A DNA stretch of 63,987 nt, filler included, from Hyphochytrium catenoides (Eukaryota > Protista > Hyphochytriomycota): NCBI GenBank assembly GCA_900088475.1. It is 14 parts of 14 records of this genome, joined end to end, with 100 filler letters (N's around TTAATTAATTAA, not from the genome) between each part and the next. Parts side by side here need not be neighbours in the genome. Positions count along the whole stretch, not along the records: positions 1 to 6,573 come from FLMG01004459.1; 13 more parts are not named here. One strand, 5' to 3'. Made by a program: the position numbers and the translations under genes. This document shows, piece after piece, positions 1 through 6,573 of the stretch. The notes beneath the pieces were generated by a model that was given only the letters and a program-made list of their open reading frames with translations, was not told the origin of the DNA and did no database searches. The first letter of the stretch is position 1, and every line of letters begins with the position of its first letter.

Positions 1-930
1 AGAGAGAGAGAGAGAGAAGAGAGAAGTGTAAGAACAACTGGTGGAGCGTGTGTCCTCCATTCTCTCACATGATCAATGTCTTCCTGGTGTTGATAGATAA
101 TAATATGACCGGAACCCTGAGATAAGACAAAATTGTACTAAGTGACAGCAGTAGTAATACATGGTAAAGTGGGGTGGACAACCGCTAAAAGGTGTGTTAG
201 GTAAGAACCAGCAGCCATGGAAAGCGAGGGATAAGAGCTACCACGTAACATACATTTGGGTAGGTGGCCTCTGAGTATGGGGACAGCGTGCCCTTTGGGC
301 GCCTTCAAGCTTCGGTTCTGAATGATGGGAGATACTGGAGGAGCTGTGTGTGTGTCTGTCTGTCGAGCCTCCATCCTTCTGATGAACCACCGATGGGAAA
401 GCAAGAATAGAATCTCAGAGGAAGACAAGCTGGCGACTGAGGTTAGCGGTCATTGTGCGCAGTAGGAGGTAGGCAGCAAAGCAGAGGGATGCCAAGGAAT
501 GTATGGGTTGGTGATGAGAGCAACAAGTTCTTCACTGTTAAATGAGTGAGGAGCGAGAGAGGAAGTGATGACTGTATACCAGCAAGTGGGAGAGAGAGAG
601 ATCCTCTCAGCTGGGTGATCCTGTGTGATTGAGTAATTCCTTGGAGCTCTGAAGACCTCATTGGACTCCGCTGTAGAGTCTCTGAGCCCATTCTTCCTTT
701 ATAGAGCTTATGTCTTCTGATAGAGCTTAACAGCTCTGAGCGGCTAATAATCAACCTACAAACGCCTGCACGGGGCCACGGCCTAGTAGCAGTGGAACGG
801 GGAGAGACGAAGCTTCTTCCAGCAGTAACATAGCTTCGTTCAGATGGGCCTTAAAGACGCTGATGGAACAGACCTCGTCCCTCCCCGCTCCGATGCCACT
901 AAGCCGCGGCCTCGTCCAGGCTCTTGTAGA

Positions 931-992: not shown

Positions 993-3779
993 CTAGAAAG
1001 GGAGGACTCTCTGTCTTTCTCTGCCACAAACCTTTATGCTCCAATTGCTGCTGTGCAGAGGCAGAGGACAGGGCTGAAGCCACTGCTGCTTGTGGTAGTG
1101 CAGCTGGGAAGGAGAATTGTCCTCCGCCTCCTGGGACAGGACAGACAAATACCAACAAGGTAGGAGGGTAGGTTGGCTAAACAGCGGACACTCTTTGCAT
1201 ATATAGTGTCCGTGTATCCCAATTCCTCAGTCTGTCGGTCCTTATGAACAACCTTTGACTGCGGTCGGCTATGAGTGCTTATAAGTCTTGTCTCCCTCAT
1301 CGCACCAGAGCTATACTCTATATACATTCCCCTCTGTCTCCGCTTCTCTTCTGGCATTCTCAGTTACCTGTTTACCGCCTTATTTATACCACTGTCTTCT
1401 CAAGTAGTCGGCTCCTCTTATCATTGCAAAACATGAAGGGGGGCTTTCCACTTCTTTTGCCTAGGGAAAGAAGAGGGCTGCTCCCAAAGCCTCATCATCT
1501 GCCCCCACGAAGCGCAAGGTAGCTTCTTCTCGATGCAGTCAACCGGAAGACTGCTGGTCTAGACACGCGGCCTCAAAGCCCGGAAAATGGCATGCACCTG
1601 GTAGGCTTAAAAGGTAACACAGTGGCTGCGATCCCTGCCAGCCTGCAGCAGGAAAAGAAAATCGTGTAGAGGTAAGGATCCACTTACACTTTGCCTCTTT
1701 GGTCCAGATCTTTTCCGTCTACAGCTTTGTTTGATCTGCTCCTTTCTTTCACTGGTGATGGTATATTTCGGAAGCAACTGTCTGGAGCCTGCTTGAGTCT
1801 AAAATTCTTCTCTCATCTTGTACTTCTCTCTACTCAATTGACTTCAATCGCTCTATCTATGGCCCGATGACAGCTTCCTAAGAGTCACCACACGCTCTCT
1901 TTAATAATCCTAGGCCGATGTACTATCGCATGTTCGATCATTGTTCGAGACGATTCTTCTGGAGGACTAGTAGTCTAAAGGAGAACAGCCTTGCTTGTCA
2001 AGAAGAGCCAGATGGTAAGGATCCAGCCAATTCATTCTTACCTATATCTGACTTCAGTCATTGCTGCTACGAAAAACACTTCCTTCCGTTCTTCGACCCC
2101 TGGGCCTTTGTGCTTTCTCCTGCCTTCTTCTTTTTGGCGTCTATCCCCACTCGCAATCTTCCTTTCTCACCGCATCTTCTTCATTACTCTTAAGGCGTTA
2201 ATCTTTCCACTGGTTCCGCTTGGAATGAGGCTCTCCCTTCTTCAAGCCTTGCTCTCCTCGCATGTGTCCTCCCCTCATGAAGAATTCCAGCAGAGCAGAG
2301 CTTGACTACACCTTCCTCTTGCATCATCGTGGTGGGGGGCTATGACTAACACTTCTGCGTGCTTTCCTGATTGCTCTTCCTTCTTGTTTAGTTTGCCTAG
2401 TAGATGGTTTTCGAGAAGTTCGCTGCCAAGAGGGCCTCTTTCTGTGCGTGACGAGCTCGTTCCGAGTCCTTGCTGTGAGGAGTAGGTAGGAGATGTCCTG
2501 CGTATCGGCGATACGGTTGGGCGTGGTGGCCAGCGGCTGGGCAAGAAGGGCGTCTTCTCGCTACAATGGCTCAACCCAAAGGAGTGTTGGACAGAAATGG
2601 TTGCTGCTTGTCTTTTTTACTTAGTTTTCTCGATCGCTCTTATAAAAATCTCTTCTTATACTATCATTGAGATGTGACCCTTTGGTATCAAGAAATTAGT
2701 AAAGACTGTGTAATCGACTACTGTTTGAAGAAGCAGAAGAGAAGCAAATATGTACTACGAAGCAACAAAAGAGAATGGAGAAAGAGCTGAAATAGGCCAG
2801 AAAGAAAGGAAGAGCACAGTAGCTAGGACCTCACCCGGCCCCCAAGGGCCGGGAATTGACAGTAGAAAGCAACTGTGGGGCTACCAAGGAGGCGGCGGCG
2901 GCGGGGAGATCGTCCTCCTCTCCAATACTTCGAGAGAGGAAAAAGTCTTGCTCCTGCTCACGGTCAACAACCGAGTGTTTGGAGTGAACATAACATCATC
3001 ATCACTACTGTCACCAAGACTGTCACCCACGACGACGCACAGTAGTAGAAGAACAGCTCTGCCTGTAGTCTCTCCTCACCCATACATAAGCGCGTACTGC
3101 TGCTGATGAAGAAGAGTAGACCTAGGTAGTAGCTAGCAGGTAGTACTTTTGCTTTTATCGATCAATCCCAAGGAGCAGTCAGCCTTGGAGGAGGAGGATG
3201 ATAGTGAGTGCGAAAGATTGGTAGTTCCTGGTAGTACGAGCAGGTTTGAATGTTGAATGATGAGCTAGTAGCTATAATGATGACTACCTACTACGTACCA
3301 GCAGCTCCGGTAAAGATTCTGAGCAAGCGGCAGAGGCTAAGACTGACCGAGGAAATCTGAAAGTGACGGAGGAGGAGGTCAGCCCCATCCTACAACCGCG
3401 CCAGCAGGAAAACCTAATTGATATCCCTCCCTGGATATTCCAACGGTACGTCAGCCATAATGAGTTGTTCTCGTCTCGAAGTTCTTGATGGTAGCCTTCC
3501 ACAACTCTGCAGCTAGCAACAACCTGGTGATCGGGTAGTGAGAACTGTGATAATAGCGGTGCCCTGCCCACCAACCTATCCTCCTCTTTCTCTTTCGAAC
3601 CTCCTCAACAACGTAGTGTTAGCCGCCACTACTACTTACAAAAAAGTATGTTATTAATTAGCAGTCCTTCTACTATGAAAAATCGCTTTCTTCTTTCTCG
3701 TCGTCAGAGACTGTGTGCAGCTCCTCACTACGTCAAAATAGTATTGGCCATGATGAGGACGGACTGCCCCAAGGTACTT

Positions 3780-4526
3780 TTATGTAGAAGAAGATGTTAT
3801 AATCTTGCGCCTCTTAGTCCTACTCATATTGTGCTCCAGAAGAGATATTCTTTCACTTTTTCTTCCACCACCACCAGCTTTTTCTTCACTCTGGAGTCGT
3901 GATGATGCGGCTCCTCCTTCTTTTTCTGAACCCAGCGGCTTCAATTTTTTGTCCCGACAACAAGAATCTCGTCGTCGCAATTCTGCTCTCAATTCCATCA
4001 GCAGCGCTCCTCCAGCGAAAGCATCTCCCTGATAGCCCCGGGAGACGTGTGAAAGCACAGCATCCTTCGTGTTGAGAAGGAGATCTCTATACTCGAGCAT
4101 GTTAAATTTGCACCTCAACGCCTTCTTGATAACATTACGTTTGACTGAGTCCCATCTCCTCAGTTGGTCCTTTGTCAAATGGAGTTTCCTTTTTCCGGTG
4201 CTCCTCTTTGCATCCAAAGTGCTCAAACGTTTTATTCTTCTATTTATGATTCGAATGTCTTCGCCGCTAACGACATGAACTTTGTAACCATGGAAGTAAT
4301 GCTCAACCGACGGCCATGGTAGCCCCTCGTCGTCGACGAAGTTGCATGGATAGAAGTTGGACAGCTTTTGCCTGAAGTTTGTGAAGGCTATGTCCTGAAA
4401 ATCGTCGCCAGGACGCAATCTCTCCCCAACTCCGCAACCAGGAGCTGCATCTTTAGATCTGCTGAAGTATCGAAACAACGAAGGCTGCTGCCGATCGCTA
4501 TTACTACTACTACTCGAAGAAGCCAT
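3780..4526 (-). CDS. NADAR (YbiA-like) domain protein, intronless, with N-terminal PIP-box-like motif and basic C-terminus
   Basis: 248-aa ORF with NADAR hallmarks LSNFY, WPSVEHYF..YK, W...KRNVIKKALRCKF, LLLNT.DAVL, LLMELR; QPSLFRYF at residues 14-21; SRTKRRK near the C-terminus. Confidence 0.85.
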   Translation of the reverse strand: MASSSSSSNSDRQQPSLFRYFSRSKDAAPGCGVGERLRPGDDFQDIAFTNFRQKLSNFYPCNFVDDEGLPWPSVEHYFHGYKVHVVSGEDIRIINRRIKRLSTLDAKRSTGKRKLHLTKDQLRRWDSVKRNVIKKALRCKFNMLEYRDLLLNTKDAVLSHVSRGYQGDAFAGGALLMELRAELRRRDSCCRDKKLKPLGSEKEGGAASSRLQSEEKAGGGGRKSERISLLEHNMSRTKRRKIITSSST

Positions 4527-4920
4527 TGTTGGTTGTTGATTCTTCTTCTTCTTCTTCTGCAGCGCTTTTCACCGGTGCATAAATATAACCAACAAAAAGG
4601 ATGATGGTCTCTTCGTTCGTTCGTTCCGAAGAAGATGGAGACAACTCACTGGTTGCCACTATTATGATGATGATTGTGCTTTATGATGTGTGCCAGAGCT
4701 TGGAAAGAGAGCGTGATGTTATGCAGCGCGGCGCGGGATGATGCTTGTGGTCTCTCCTATCAAAAAACTCTGCCTAGGACGATGAGGAAGAAGAAGTAAG
4801 GAGGTCGGGGCAGAAAAGTAGCACAGTAAATATACTGAGGATCCTTTATTTGTCTGCTGTACAGTTAGGAACATTGCCCTTTCATCCCTCAATCAATGGG
4901 TTGTTCTACAATAGAAAGTA

Positions 4921-4959
4921 CCTAACCCTAACCCTAACCCTAACCCTAACCCTAACCCT
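4921..4959. repeat. Interstitial telomere-like repeat (CCCTAA)x~6.5
   Basis: cctaaccctaaccctaaccctaaccctaaccctaaccct, internal to the contig with unique sequence on both sides. Confidence 0.9.
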
Positions 4960-6573
4960 CGAGGAACTTATTAGGAACCTAAATAAAGACCTTTTCCTTA
5001 TGGGTGACACCGATATTGGTGGATTCAGAATATGCTATCTATCTCAAACCGAAATCTGGAAGAAGTGACATGATATCCAGGATCACAATCTGCAGACCTG
5101 TTTAGGCGCCTTTGATGACTTTCACAGTTCCCGCTCCGTCCTCACTTGTTGTGGAGTTTAGAAAGGCTTTTTAAAATGGCAATAATAAAATTGCAAATCT
5201 TTTTCTTCGAAGGATGTCTCCATGAAGAAGGTGGTGTTAGCATCATCTTGAGAGACTTCCCACTACTTTCTTGTCTGGGAGCTTCTCCATCCTCCCTTCT
5301 TATGATTTATGTTCGCGGCGGCGGCGGCGGTTAACGTTGTTGCTGCTAGCTGCTGCTGCTGCTGCATGCGCCGCGGGCAGCAGATGATTATTGCTGCTGC
5401 AATGTCACTTCTTGAGCTGCTGCATAATAATAACAGAAATAATAGTAGGAAGCTCCCATCATCATGGATGACAGCAGTCCGTCTTCGTCGTCGTCGCGGT
5501 CAACAATAAATCGACGAAGTATTGAGAATGGCGTTTCTACCACCCGTACTTCTTCACTGTCACTTCCATTATCCTCCATCCACCACCTAAATATTGATGA
5601 TGAGACTGCTGCCACCAGCAGACCACTCATCACTCGGCGACAATAGTAACTTCATCACTCTTTCCAACCATAGATGATAAAGAGCTCGTCTTGTAGTAGT
5701 TCTACTACTGCACCTCTTCCTCCTCCTCATTTTTTGATGATTTCCACTGATGATGATCGATCAAAGGCTGCTGGCTACCCAGTGGAGGGATACAACAGAA
5801 GAAGAGAAGAGAGTTTCCTCCTCCGAAAGGCCGCGCGCACCATCGCGCGCGGGGCGGTCTCTAGTACCAGTAGTAGTGGAGAGATTATTAGTGCCACGAG
5901 TGACGTAATTTTTGGTCAATAATGCTGTTGTTATCAGTAGAACAAGCGGAAAAAGGAAACTAGTCGTCATGATGATGAATAATAATAGTCCTCTTCAGCA
6001 CCGCACGAACACTCTTTCATATTTCACGCTTTATGATTCTCTATGCTACTAGAAAATCAGCAGCAGCGTTCTTCTTGTTGGAAGATACCATGATGTGATG
6101 CAAGGATAAAAATGTACTGCGAGTAACACCGACTACCAGCTTCGGTAAGGTTGGAAGCGACAACAGCCATGATGGGCAGCTCTCTTACTCGAGATGTCAA
6201 TGGTACCAGCAGCAGCCAACATACTCTGCTGCAAGATGGACAACGTAGTAACAGTGCGCAGTTATTAGGCCATAGTACTCGTAGGCCACAAGACGGAAGT
6301 ACGTCCGTAAGCACTTCCGTCACGCAAAGAAGAATCTCATGATATGTATGGGGTACCTCAGGATCAAGTGGTGCTTGTTACTTTTGGGTATCCGAGGTTA
6401 GTACAAGAAACCTCGCTAAATACTTCAGCAACGCAAGAACCATCCGAGAATAGCAACAAGTTCGAGGATAAGAGTAACGGACCTTTAGTGGTATGTTGAA
6501 TCCTTGGGAAAGATCCTCTTTGGCTCCTTCACTCCCTCCCTCTCTCTCTCTCTCTCTTTCTCTCTCTCCCTCT

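What the first reader, a model, noticed from the sequence alone, without database searches (positions are those of the whole stretch)
3780..4526. Eukaryotic NADAR hydrolase carrying a canonical PCNA-interacting (PIP) box and an NLS-like tail
Seen: residues 14-21 QPSLFRYF (motif region nt ~4487-4452) match Q-x-x-[LIM]-x-x-[FY]-[FY] exactly, sit in a low-complexity N-terminus, and have a Lys four residues after the second aromatic (the basic position of CRL4-Cdt2 PIP degrons, although the TD is absent). The C-terminus has SRTKRRK. Known: bacterial NADARs act as antitoxins that remove ADP-ribose from guanine in DNA (DarT1-NADAR), and YbiA acts on riboflavin intermediates. Inference: a nuclear NADAR riding on PCNA would be a replication-coupled eraser of DNA base ADP-ribosylation in a eukaryote, either as repair or as counter-defence. 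I know of no description of this combination. No cognate ADP-ribosyltransferase was seen in the window.
Basis: partly seen in the sequence, partly recalled or inferred. Interest (0 to 1): 0.8.

Follow-up and report, generated by a model that had tools for sequence, protein, structure and literature searches.

The report
NADAR enzyme; the "PIP box" is structural
The gene is a real ADP-ribose-removing (NADAR) enzyme of a type found mostly in giant viruses and a few protists, but the supposed PCNA-docking motif is the first beta-strand of the enzyme's fold, so there is no sign that it rides on the replication clamp.

Summary
The 248-aa ORF at 3780-4526(-) is real and passes Pfam's NADAR threshold. 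Its model matches solved NADARs (Z 14.6 and 14.1). E75 and K82 are kept. The last strand carries His160 where the YbiA family has Glu, as in phage gp30.3/AdfN.

QPSLFRYF (residues 14-21) does fit the PIP pattern, but it is not a disordered docking motif:
- Residues 17-20 are a confident beta-strand, and the structural match with YbiA and Phytophthora NADAR begins at residues 13-14.
- The aromatic pair belongs to a family signature (hydrophobic-F-x-F-[YF]-S-x-S-[KA]-D-x-x-P-G-x-G-x-G-E) found in 140 homologues. These include giant-virus genomes, where it lies hundreds of residues inside larger proteins.
- Gln14 is kept in 7 of 101 homologues, and a near-orthologue has Glu.
- E. coli YbiA, from an organism without PCNA, reads QDTIINFY at the corresponding N-terminal stretch.

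The 62-residue basic tail (KRRK) exists, is predicted disordered and occurs in no homologue. As an NLS it is weak and untested.

Relatives are mostly Nucleocytoviricota, plus chytrids and Naegleria. A second allele in public DNA runs differs at 9 synonymous and 4 non-synonymous sites, so the gene is probably functional.

Verdict: an ordinary new member of a known enzyme family. The PCNA reading is not supported.

The parts
3780..4526 (-). Intronless ORF of 248 aa (stop codon included) encoding a stand-alone NADAR-domain protein
   Evidence: ORF list and sequence. Pfam NADAR 41.1 bits against a cut-off of 35.1. 644 homologues at E<=0.001.
4488..4526 (-). Residues 1-13: poly-Ser, low-complexity N-terminal extension, not conserved
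   Evidence: A1 alignment. pLDDT 69 for residues 1-10. The second allele in public DNA runs has one extra codon (+3 nt, in frame) in this serine-rich tract and N9S.
4464..4487 (-). It is the entry to, and first beta-strand of, the NADAR fold.
   Evidence: DSSP strand 17-20 at pLDDT above 90. Model 13..196 aligns with YbiA 12..168 and model 14..189 with 8bau 6..187. The family profile aligns this stretch with YbiA QDTIINFYSTSDD, weakly (-2.2 bits). Column counts.
4371..4463 (-). Residues 22-52: subfamily-specific insertion S-x-S-[KA]-D-x-x-P-G-x-G-x-G-E ... W/F-R between strand 1 and the LSNF motif. E35 is invariant; G30, G32 and R52 are nearly invariant.
   Evidence: A1 alignment. The canonical NADARs P0003 and P0004 lack it. 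Column counts over 140 homologues. pLDDT 96-97.
3969..4370 (-). Residues 53-186: core NADAR helices and last strand, with LSNF (55-58), E75, K82, W125 and His160 in the last strand (157-160). The canonical D-x-YWG-x-G loop is deleted.
   Evidence: Pfam match 53-162. PDB sequence alignments. Column counts: E75 137/139, K82 137/139, H160 124/136. Residue roles from PMC11543638.
3780..3968 (-). Residues 187-248 plus the stop codon: lineage-specific, basic, disordered tail with KKLK (193-196) and KRRK (238-241)
   Evidence: No other sequence in A1 reaches its KRRK end; a few have unrelated shorter extensions. Block-mean pLDDT falls from 74 (residues 191-200) to 47-58 (201-240). The frame stays open in only 1% of shuffles of its DNA; a run of four or more K/R appears in 12% of tail shuffles and K[KR]x[KR] in 33%.

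Best explanation
The ORF encodes a stand-alone NADAR-superfamily N-glycohydrolase. It belongs to a subfamily found mainly in giant viruses (Nucleocytoviricota) and patchily in protists and chytrid fungi.

Three features mark the subfamily:
- a His (His160 here) in the last beta-strand, where the YbiA family has Glu, as in phage gp30.3/AdfN;
- a roughly 30-residue ordered insertion (S-x-S-[KA]-D-x-x-P-G-x-G-x-G-E ... W/F-R) between strand 1 and the LSNF motif;
- loss of the canonical D-x-YWG-x-G loop.

By analogy with characterised NADARs, it most likely binds ADP-ribose through K82, K106, W125 and K129 and cleaves the ribose-base N-glycosidic bond with E75 and H160. That would remove ADP-ribose from a nucleic-acid base, with guanine N2 as the default guess. 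The fold and the conserved residues are shown here. The activity and the substrate are inferred.

The sequence QPSLFRYF is the first strand of this fold. By inference it pairs with the strand that carries His160. It is not a PCNA-docking peptide. The host-specific basic tail may help nuclear or nucleic-acid targeting, but that is speculative.
For: - Pfam NADAR is above its cut-off. All 37 aligned homologues hit NADAR and 13 also hit Phage_30_3 weakly.
- The AF2 model has mean pLDDT 86.8, with 93 or more for residues 11-190. VIA-align gives Z 14.6 to YbiA 2b3w (model 13..196) and Z 14.1 to Phytophthora NADAR 8bau (model 14..189). Foldseek E-values are 1.9e-8 and 1.1e-6.
- Column counts over 140 homologues: F18 hydrophobic 131/135, Y20 aromatic 136/137, S22 118/136, S24 128/136, G30 124/128, G32 125/128, E35 125/125, R52 126/128, E75 137/139, K82 137/139, H160 124/136. 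In contrast, Q14 is kept in 7/101, and position 17 reads V36, K26, R21, I18, L5.
- The close homologue P0002 (59% identical) starts MNEPSLFRYF, with Glu in place of Gln.
- YbiA has QDTIINFY at residues 13-20, and its first secondary-structure element starts at T15 (PMC11543638).
- Giant-virus MAG loci L005-L014 carry ...IIFRFYSKSKNVAPGEGKGE... about 400-500 residues inside larger ORFs.
- Other relatives sit on giant-virus-like contigs with a D5 primase-helicase, F-box, ankyrin and RING genes. Atlas clusters are 60-73% viruses, mostly Nucleocytoviricota. BFVD hits are Marseillevirus, Mimivirus, Tupanvirus and Pithovirus NADARs.
- The literature describes His in place of Glu in phage NADARs, and the roles of E43, K50 and E125 (PMC11543638, PMC11125620, PMC11825919).
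- The second allele shows 9 synonymous against 4 non-synonymous differences, and its only length change in the deeper runs X1 and X2 is an in-frame 3-nt insertion.
Against: - No biochemical data exist for this subfamily. The substrate is extrapolated from NADARs about 30% identical.
- The pyrophosphate contacts W133 and D130 of the Phytophthora enzyme lie in the loop that is deleted here, so binding geometry may differ.
- Pfam aligns only profile positions 11-123 of 163.
- No RNA-seq run was listed for this organism, so expression and the 5' end are unverified.
Burial of L17, Y20 and F21 is inferred from the strand assignment, pLDDT and conservation, not measured.
- The sequence-level match of this stretch to YbiA residues 13-25 is weak (-2.2 bits), and VIA-align reports ranges rather than residue pairs, so the exact register rests on inference.
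Confidence: 0.85

Rival explanations
1. One reading: QPSLFRYF is a working PIP box that tethers a nuclear NADAR to PCNA for replication-coupled removal of ADP-ribose from DNA bases.
For: The literal pattern matches and Lys lies at +4. The motif is near the N-terminus. The near-orthologue P0001 keeps QPSLFRYF. Naegleria P0018 reads QPSVLFYY. A basic tail is present.
Against: The residues form a confident beta-strand inside the fold and fall within the structural alignment with solved NADARs. The aromatic pair is conserved in viral homologues, and the canonical NADARs P0003 and P0004 and E. coli YbiA carry one at the corresponding stretch. In giant-virus proteins it lies internally. Gln is kept in 7/101 homologues and is Glu in P0002. 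Conservation has a period of 2 (F18, Y20, S22), which marks a strand rather than a 3-10 helix. E. coli YbiA matches the same pattern. The observed number of pattern matches equals the chance expectation from column frequencies. The TD of a PIP degron is absent.
Confidence: 0.04
2. The enzyme is targeted to the nucleus, or to nucleic acid, by its lineage-specific basic tail without involving PCNA. There it removes base ADP-ribosylation as repair or as defence against ART toxins from viruses or bacteria.
For: The tail is 24% K+R, contains KKLK and KRRK, is predicted disordered, and its frame stays open in only 1% of shuffles. Eukaryotic NADARs hydrolyse ADPr-guanine in vitro (PMC11543638).
Against: The tail is absent from every homologue, including the 65% and 59% identical ones. 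The basic-cluster pattern arises in 12-33% of tail shuffles. The tail DNA is purine-rich. There are no localisation data and no ART gene in the window.
Confidence: 0.25
3. It is a metabolic N-glycosidase that clears reactive riboflavin-pathway intermediates, like E. coli YbiA and the plant enzymes.
For: TIGR02464 (riboflavin intermediates N-glycosidase) gives 45.1 bits. YbiA is the best PDB match by sequence and fold.
Against: The score is far below the curated cut-off of 73.7 bits. The YbiA-type Glu is replaced by His, and the D-x-YWG loop is deleted. There is no fusion with or neighbourhood of RibA or RibD. The subfamily is concentrated in giant viruses.
Confidence: 0.08
4. It is a decaying or unexpressed remnant of a giant-virus insertion with no present function.
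For: The nearest relatives beyond two orthologues are viral. The gene is intronless and isolated among non-coding sequence. No RNA run was listed.
Against: The ORF is intact, with all conserved catalytic and signature residues. The second allele shows 9 synonymous against 4 non-synonymous differences, and in the deeper runs X1 and X2 its only length change in the ORF is in frame. GC content matches the flanks. No other viral gene lies nearby.
Confidence: 0.08

Closest known systems
Phage gp30.3 / AdfN (T4 anti-DarT factor NADAR; Pfam PF08010)
   Same: NADAR fold with His in place of the YbiA-type Glu in the last strand. Small stand-alone protein. Viral association. AdfN removes ADP-ribose from guanine in DNA (PMC11825919).
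   Different: PF08010 scores only 18.4 bits against a cut-off of 36. This subfamily has the roughly 30-residue S-x-S-K-D-x-x-P-G-x-G-x-G-E insertion. It occurs in giant viruses and eukaryotes, not in T4-like phages.
Phytophthora nicotianae NADAR (PDB 8bau)
   Same: Eukaryotic, not linked to DarT, and the same fold (Z 14.1). The equivalents of E43 and K50 are conserved. It has an extension of the YbiA fold next to the active site that is encoded partly by an insertion (PMC11543638).
   Different: 28% identity. It has Glu125 in the last strand and keeps the W133/D130 loop. Its insertion differs in sequence and position.
E. coli YbiA (PDB 2b3w; TIGR02464)
   Same: Best structural match (Z 14.6). 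Same strand 1, including a literal Q-x-x-I-x-x-F-Y.
   Different: It has Glu rather than His, lacks the insertion, and keeps the canonical YWG loop. It is a riboflavin-intermediate N-glycosidase. TIGR02464 scores below its cut-off here.
DarT1-associated NADAR antitoxins (BC4488 family)
   Same: Same superfamily and presumed chemistry (ADPr-guanine hydrolysis).
   Different: They have Asp in the last strand, an N-terminal beta-beta-alpha extension, and an adjacent DarT1 gene. None of these is present here.
Canonical PIP-box proteins (p21, FEN1, Cdt1)
   Same: The eight-residue pattern Q-x-x-L-x-x-Y-F, with Lys at +4.
   Different: In those proteins the motif lies in a disordered region and folds into a 3-10 helix on PCNA. 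Here it is a strand of a folded catalytic domain, and the Gln is not conserved.

Membership tests
NADAR superfamily (PF08719) | Profile match above the curated threshold | tested here: met
   41.1 bits against 35.1. 37 of 37 aligned homologues hit NADAR.
NADAR superfamily (PF08719) | YbiA-like fold: helical core flanked by small sheets | tested here: met
   The AF2 model matches 2b3w at Z 14.6 and 8bau at Z 14.1. The next hit scores Z 4.2.
NADAR superfamily (PF08719) | Conserved Glu and Lys of the active site (E43 and K50 in Phytophthora numbering) | tested here: met
   E75 and K82 align to them and are kept in 137/139 homologues.
NADAR superfamily (PF08719) | Hydrolysis of an ADP-ribose N-glycosidic bond | not testable with these tools
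   Needs an enzyme assay.
Phage-type (gp30.3/AdfN) NADAR | His in the last strand in place of Glu or Asp | tested here: met
   H160 lies in strand 157-160. The column reads H 124/136 and E 9/136. The exact register against YbiA's VEH is ambiguous by one residue.
Phage-type (gp30.3/AdfN) NADAR | PF08010 profile above threshold | tested here: not met
   18.4 bits against a cut-off of 36.
YbiA family / riboflavin-intermediate N-glycosidase (TIGR02464) | Equivalog profile above threshold, and Glu in the last strand | tested here: not met
   45.1 bits against 73.7. His is present instead of Glu.
DarT1-NADAR toxin-antitoxin (BC4488 family) | Asp in the last strand and an adjacent DarT1 gene | tested here: not met
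   His160. No other Pfam domain appears among ten of the longer flanking ORFs of the window (81-135 aa).
PIP-box PCNA-interacting proteins | Pattern Q-x-x-[LIM]-x-x-[FY]-[FY] | tested here: met
   QPSLFRYF at residues 14-21. At this position the pattern also occurs in P0088, and E. coli YbiA has it at the corresponding N-terminal stretch.
PIP-box PCNA-interacting proteins | The motif lies in an accessible, disordered segment able to form a 3-10 helix on PCNA | tested here: not met
   Strand 17-20 at pLDDT above 90. The stretch falls inside the structural alignment with solved NADARs, which begins at model residues 13-14.
PIP-box PCNA-interacting proteins | The motif-defining positions (Q, aliphatic, aromatic pair) are conserved in orthologues as a motif, apart from fold constraints | tested here: not met
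   Q is kept in 7/101 homologues and is Glu in P0002. Position 17 is often K or R. The aromatic pair is conserved across viral homologues, and the canonical NADARs carry one too, as part of F-x-F-[YF]-S-x-S.
PIP-box PCNA-interacting proteins | Physical binding to PCNA | not testable with these tools
   No complex prediction or pull-down is available.
CRL4-Cdt2 PIP degron | TD at motif positions 5-6 plus a basic residue at +4 | tested here: not met
   Positions 5-6 are F-R. K25 is part of the family motif S-x-S-[KA]-D (K 46, A 47 of 134).
Classical monopartite NLS | K-[KR]-x-[KR] cluster in an accessible region, conserved, and functional in import | tested here: inconclusive
   KRRK at 238-241 and KKLK at 193-196 lie in a disordered tail. 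The pattern arises in 33% of tail shuffles, and the tail is absent from all homologues. Import is not testable here.

The most novel reading that the evidence does not exclude
A protist has taken up and kept a giant-virus-type NADAR. In this type, the subfamily-specific ordered insertion (invariant E35, nearly invariant G30, G32 and R52) replaces the canonical D-x-YWG pyrophosphate-binding loop and, together with His160, gives a substrate specificity different from the known ADPr-guanine erasers, for example another base or RNA. That would make it a piece of a virus-host conflict over nucleic-acid ADP-ribosylation in eukaryotes that has not yet been described. The host-specific basic tail would then direct it to the nucleus.
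Probability: 0.15. Interest if true: 0.55.

Novelty: new member of a known kind. Interest (0 to 1): 0.15.

Why it matters
If the PCNA link had held, it would have been the first replication-coupled eraser of DNA base ADP-ribosylation in a eukaryote. It does not hold. The case shows how a short linear-motif pattern can arise from the core strand of a fold: even E. coli YbiA carries the same pattern.

What remains is modest. It is one more eukaryotic NADAR. It belongs to a subfamily rich in giant viruses, with His in the last strand and an ordered insertion, and no member of that subfamily has been assayed as far as I could find. The roles of eukaryotic and giant-virus NADARs are an acknowledged open question (PMC11125620), so the subfamily as a whole, rather than this gene, may merit a biochemical look.

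Tried and rejected
- No RNA run was listed for the gene, so expression and the transcript start could not be checked.
- Rfam and tRNA scans of the piece found nothing.
- A Pfam scan of ten flanking ORFs found nothing credible. No ART, PCNA or other partner gene is in the window.
- tblastn of all ORF pieces from L001-L004 against the window matched only the NADAR gene, so there is no synteny.
- The search for related loci with the 37-sequence alignment failed for lack of a conserved stretch. With the single protein it found no viral relative. With the 8-sequence alignment it found 19 viral loci.
- The literature searches for NADAR with PCNA and for NADAR with giant viruses returned nothing relevant.
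- The neighbours of L001 gave only a GNAT acetyltransferase, which is uninformative.
- The bacterial promoter and terminator scan is irrelevant here.
- I considered and rejected a start codon downstream of the motif. The next Met is residue 143, inside the domain.
- I could not compute solvent accessibility because model coordinates are not exposed to scripts.

Full report
**Observation.** The piece holds one long ORF, at 3780-4526 on the minus strand. It is 248 aa and starts at an ATG in a good context, caacaATGg. The protein begins MASSSSSSNSDRQQPSLFRYFSRSKD. QPSLFRYF therefore occupies residues 14-21 and fits Q-x-x-[LIM]-x-x-[FY]-[FY], and Lys25 lies four residues after Phe21. The C-terminus reads ...NMSRTKRRKIITSSST. 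The next Met is residue 143, so a start downstream of the motif is not plausible. Pfam NADAR scores 41.1 bits against a cut-off of 35.1, over residues 53-162 and profile positions 11-123 of 163. Phage_30_3 scores 18.4 bits, below its cut-off. NCBIfam TIGR02464 scores 45.1 bits, below its cut-off of 73.7. The literal observations are correct.

**What the N-terminal segment is.** An exhaustive HMMER search found 644 relatives at E<=0.001. Most of their alignments begin at query residues 14-19 and at residues 2-10 of proteins 165-190 aa long. The homology therefore already includes the supposed PIP box.

A 37-sequence alignment (A1) and a 141-sequence alignment show a family signature: hydrophobic-F-x-F-[YF]-S-x-S-[KA]-D-x-x-P-G-x-G-x-G-E, then about 15 variable residues, then W/F-R-x-x-L-S-N-F.

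| Position | Count in homologues |
|---|---|
| Q14 | Q in 7/101 |
| L17 | V36, K26, R21, I18, T12, L5 |
| F18 | hydrophobic in 131/135 |
| Y20 | F or Y in 136/137 |
| F21 | Y or F in 110/136 |
| S22 | 118/136 |
| S24 | 128/136 |
| K25 | A47, K46 |
| G30 | 124/128 |
| G32 | 125/128 |
| E35 | 125/125 |
| R52 | 126/128 |

The strongly conserved side chains fall at i, i+2 and i+4 (F18, Y20, S22). That spacing marks one face of a beta-strand. It does not fit the i, i+3, i+4 plug of a PIP 3-10 helix. The defining Gln is not conserved, and the close homologue P0002 (59% identical) begins MNEPSLFRYF, with Glu.

Canonical short NADARs (P0003, P0004) align their PIYFF[TS] strand to SLFRYFS and then run straight into LSNFYP. 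Residues 22-52 are thus an insertion between strand 1 and the LSNF motif.

**Structure.** AlphaFold2 with A1 gives mean pLDDT 86.8 and block means of 93-99 for residues 11-190. Strands are assigned at 17-20 and 157-160, with short two-residue strands at 62-63 and 69-70. Foldseek finds only YbiA (2b3w, E 1.9e-8) and Phytophthora NADAR (8bau, E 1.1e-6). VIA-align gives Z 14.6 for model 13..196 against YbiA 12..168, and Z 14.1 for model 14..189 against 8bau 6..187. The next hit scores Z 4.2. Residues 14-21 therefore fall within the structural alignment to the start of the solved folds; the tool reports ranges, not residue pairs.

The family profile aligns this stretch with YbiA residues 13-25, QDTIINFYSTSDD, though weakly at -2.2 bits. 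[quoted passage not shown] YbiA's QDTIINFY is itself a perfect match to Q-x-x-[LIM]-x-x-[FY]-[FY], in a bacterium that has no PCNA. This is a natural negative control.

Since 17-20 and 157-160 are the only four-residue strands, I infer that they pair. The strand at 157-160 carries the catalytic His160, so pulling strand 1 out to bind PCNA would break the active site.

**Chance.** Multiplying the column frequencies predicts the strict pattern in about 1% of family members and the loose pattern (V allowed) in about 2.4% (my arithmetic). Among 137 other homologues, 2 match strictly (P0001, P0088) and 4 match loosely (adding P0018 from Naegleria fowleri and P0061). That is what independent columns predict.

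**Giant-virus relatives.** P0007 and P0008, at 44-46% identity, lie on gene-dense contigs with a D5-type primase-helicase, F-box, ankyrin, RING, 2OG-Fe(II) oxygenase and chitin synthase genes. The nearest ESM-Atlas clusters are 60-73% viruses, mostly Nucleocytoviricota. BFVD hits are NADARs of Marseillevirus, Mimivirus, Terrestrivirus, Tupanvirus and Pithovirus.

A scan of IMG/VR with the closest eight sequences returned 19 loci, many of them GVMAG assemblies, matching query residues 17-184 at 26-31% identity. Translation shows ...IIFRFYSKSKNVAPGEGKGE......DIFKFYSRSADSIPGKG... and ...TVFMFYSKSASKPLPGKGSGE..., about 400-500 residues inside larger ORFs, and ...KLQHIVR... or ...KLIHHSRG... in the last strand. 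An internal strand of a viral multidomain protein cannot be a terminal PCNA-docking peptide.

Named cellular relatives are from Naegleria fowleri and the chytrids Physocladia, Obelidium and Blyttiomyces.

**Active site.** According to PMC11543638, Phytophthora NADAR uses E43 and E125 on the distal ribose. It uses K50, K75, R79, W89, R93, W133 and D130 on the pyrophosphate. The last-strand Glu is Asp in DarT1-linked NADARs and His in phage NADARs (also PMC11125620; PMC11825919).

Here E75 and K82 align to E43 and K50 and are nearly invariant, as is W125. K107 is invariant among the eight closest sequences. His160 occupies the last-strand position, where the column reads H 124 and E 9 of 136. 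The register against YbiA's VEH differs by one residue between the profile and pairwise alignments.

The canonical D-x-YWG-x-G-x-D-G loop, which holds W133 and D130, is deleted. I infer that the ordered insertion, with its invariant E35 and nearly invariant R52, may take over that role. This would parallel the YbiA-fold extensions next to the active site that are described for other NADARs.

The protein is thus a His-type NADAR. It is related to gp30.3/AdfN but is not a member of that family by the Pfam score.

**Tail.** No other sequence in A1 reaches the KRRK end of residues 187-248; a few have unrelated, shorter C-terminal extensions. Block-mean pLDDT falls from 74 for residues 191-200 to 47-58 for 201-240. 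The tail is 24% K+R and contains KKLK (193-196) and KRRK (238-241). A run of four or more basic residues appears in 12% of tail shuffles and K[KR]x[KR] in 33%. The frame stays open in only 1% of shuffles of the tail DNA. The tail is therefore probably translated and basic, but calling it an NLS is a weak and untested guess.

**Locus and gene status.** No other ORF in the piece has a credible Pfam match, and nothing but the NADAR gene is shared with the relatives' contigs. Low coding density, a (CCTAAC)6.5 interstitial telomere-type repeat at 4921-4959 and a (CT)n tract all fit a eukaryotic nuclear contig. GC content is uniform across the gene and its flanks.

Three public DNA runs of the same organism hold the region. 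Over 3993-4691 their contigs carry a second allele. Within the ORF, 13 substitutions were seen across the three runs. Nine are synonymous and four are not: N9S, R100S, S109G and D187E, the last seen only in X3. In the deeper runs X1 and X2 the only length change in the ORF is an in-frame 3-nt insertion in the serine-rich N-terminal tract. One-base deletions at 3950 and 4190 appear only in the low-depth 2011 run X3; 3950 lies in a run of A, and I take these for sequencing errors (my reading, not tested). This pattern points to purifying selection and hence to a working gene. No RNA run was listed.

**Verdict.** The NADAR assignment and the eukaryotic setting stand. The PIP-box and PCNA interpretation is not supported, because the motif is strand 1 of the fold and matches by chance. 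The NLS is possible but weak.

The gene is a new member of a known enzyme family. It belongs to a subfamily rich in giant viruses whose biochemistry, as far as I could find, is untested. Its most likely mechanism is removal of ADP-ribose from a nucleic-acid base through E75, K82 and H160. That mechanism is inferred, not shown.

Noticed in passing
window 4921-4959: Perfect (CCTAAC)x6.5 array, a rotation of CCCTAA and so a TTAGGG-type telomere repeat, lying about 400 bp upstream of the NADAR gene inside the contig. Contigs of the public runs X1 and X2 give zero depth over 4924-5071.
   Followed up: partly
window 3370-3443: Word depth in run X1 jumps to about 3000, against about 300 in the flanks (111 against about 30 in X2). 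This suggests a short dispersed repeat of about ten copies just downstream of the gene.
   Followed up: no
window 3993-4691: All three public DNA runs carry a second allele of the gene region: 11-12 substitutions (9 synonymous and 4 non-synonymous within the ORF across the runs) and an in-frame 3-nt insertion in the serine-rich N-terminal tract. The window's own allele was not among the contigs listed there.
   Followed up: yes
window 6532-6573: (CT)n / CTCTCTCCCT microsatellite at the very end of the piece.
   Followed up: no
L005-L012 (IMG/VR giant-virus MAG contigs), match at about 4001-4600: In these giant-virus genomes the same NADAR subfamily domain is the C-terminal part of ORFs that extend 400-500 residues upstream. 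At least three different N-terminal regions occur (starting MVVSKIDPALEYKEN..., MVLSILNNSINYKEN... and MCDDFGPKYKEY...), and their function was not examined.
   Followed up: no
P0008 (L003 5449-6153) and P0011 (chytrid Physocladia): These homologues carry a further insert of about 60-100 residues inside the subfamily-specific loop, between G-x-G-E and W-R. That loop therefore tolerates large additions.
   Followed up: no
L001 2298-2744: The metagenome contig that holds the 59%-identical homologue P0002 has a GNAT acetyltransferase next to it and a higher gene density than the window. There is no synteny with the window.
   Followed up: partly
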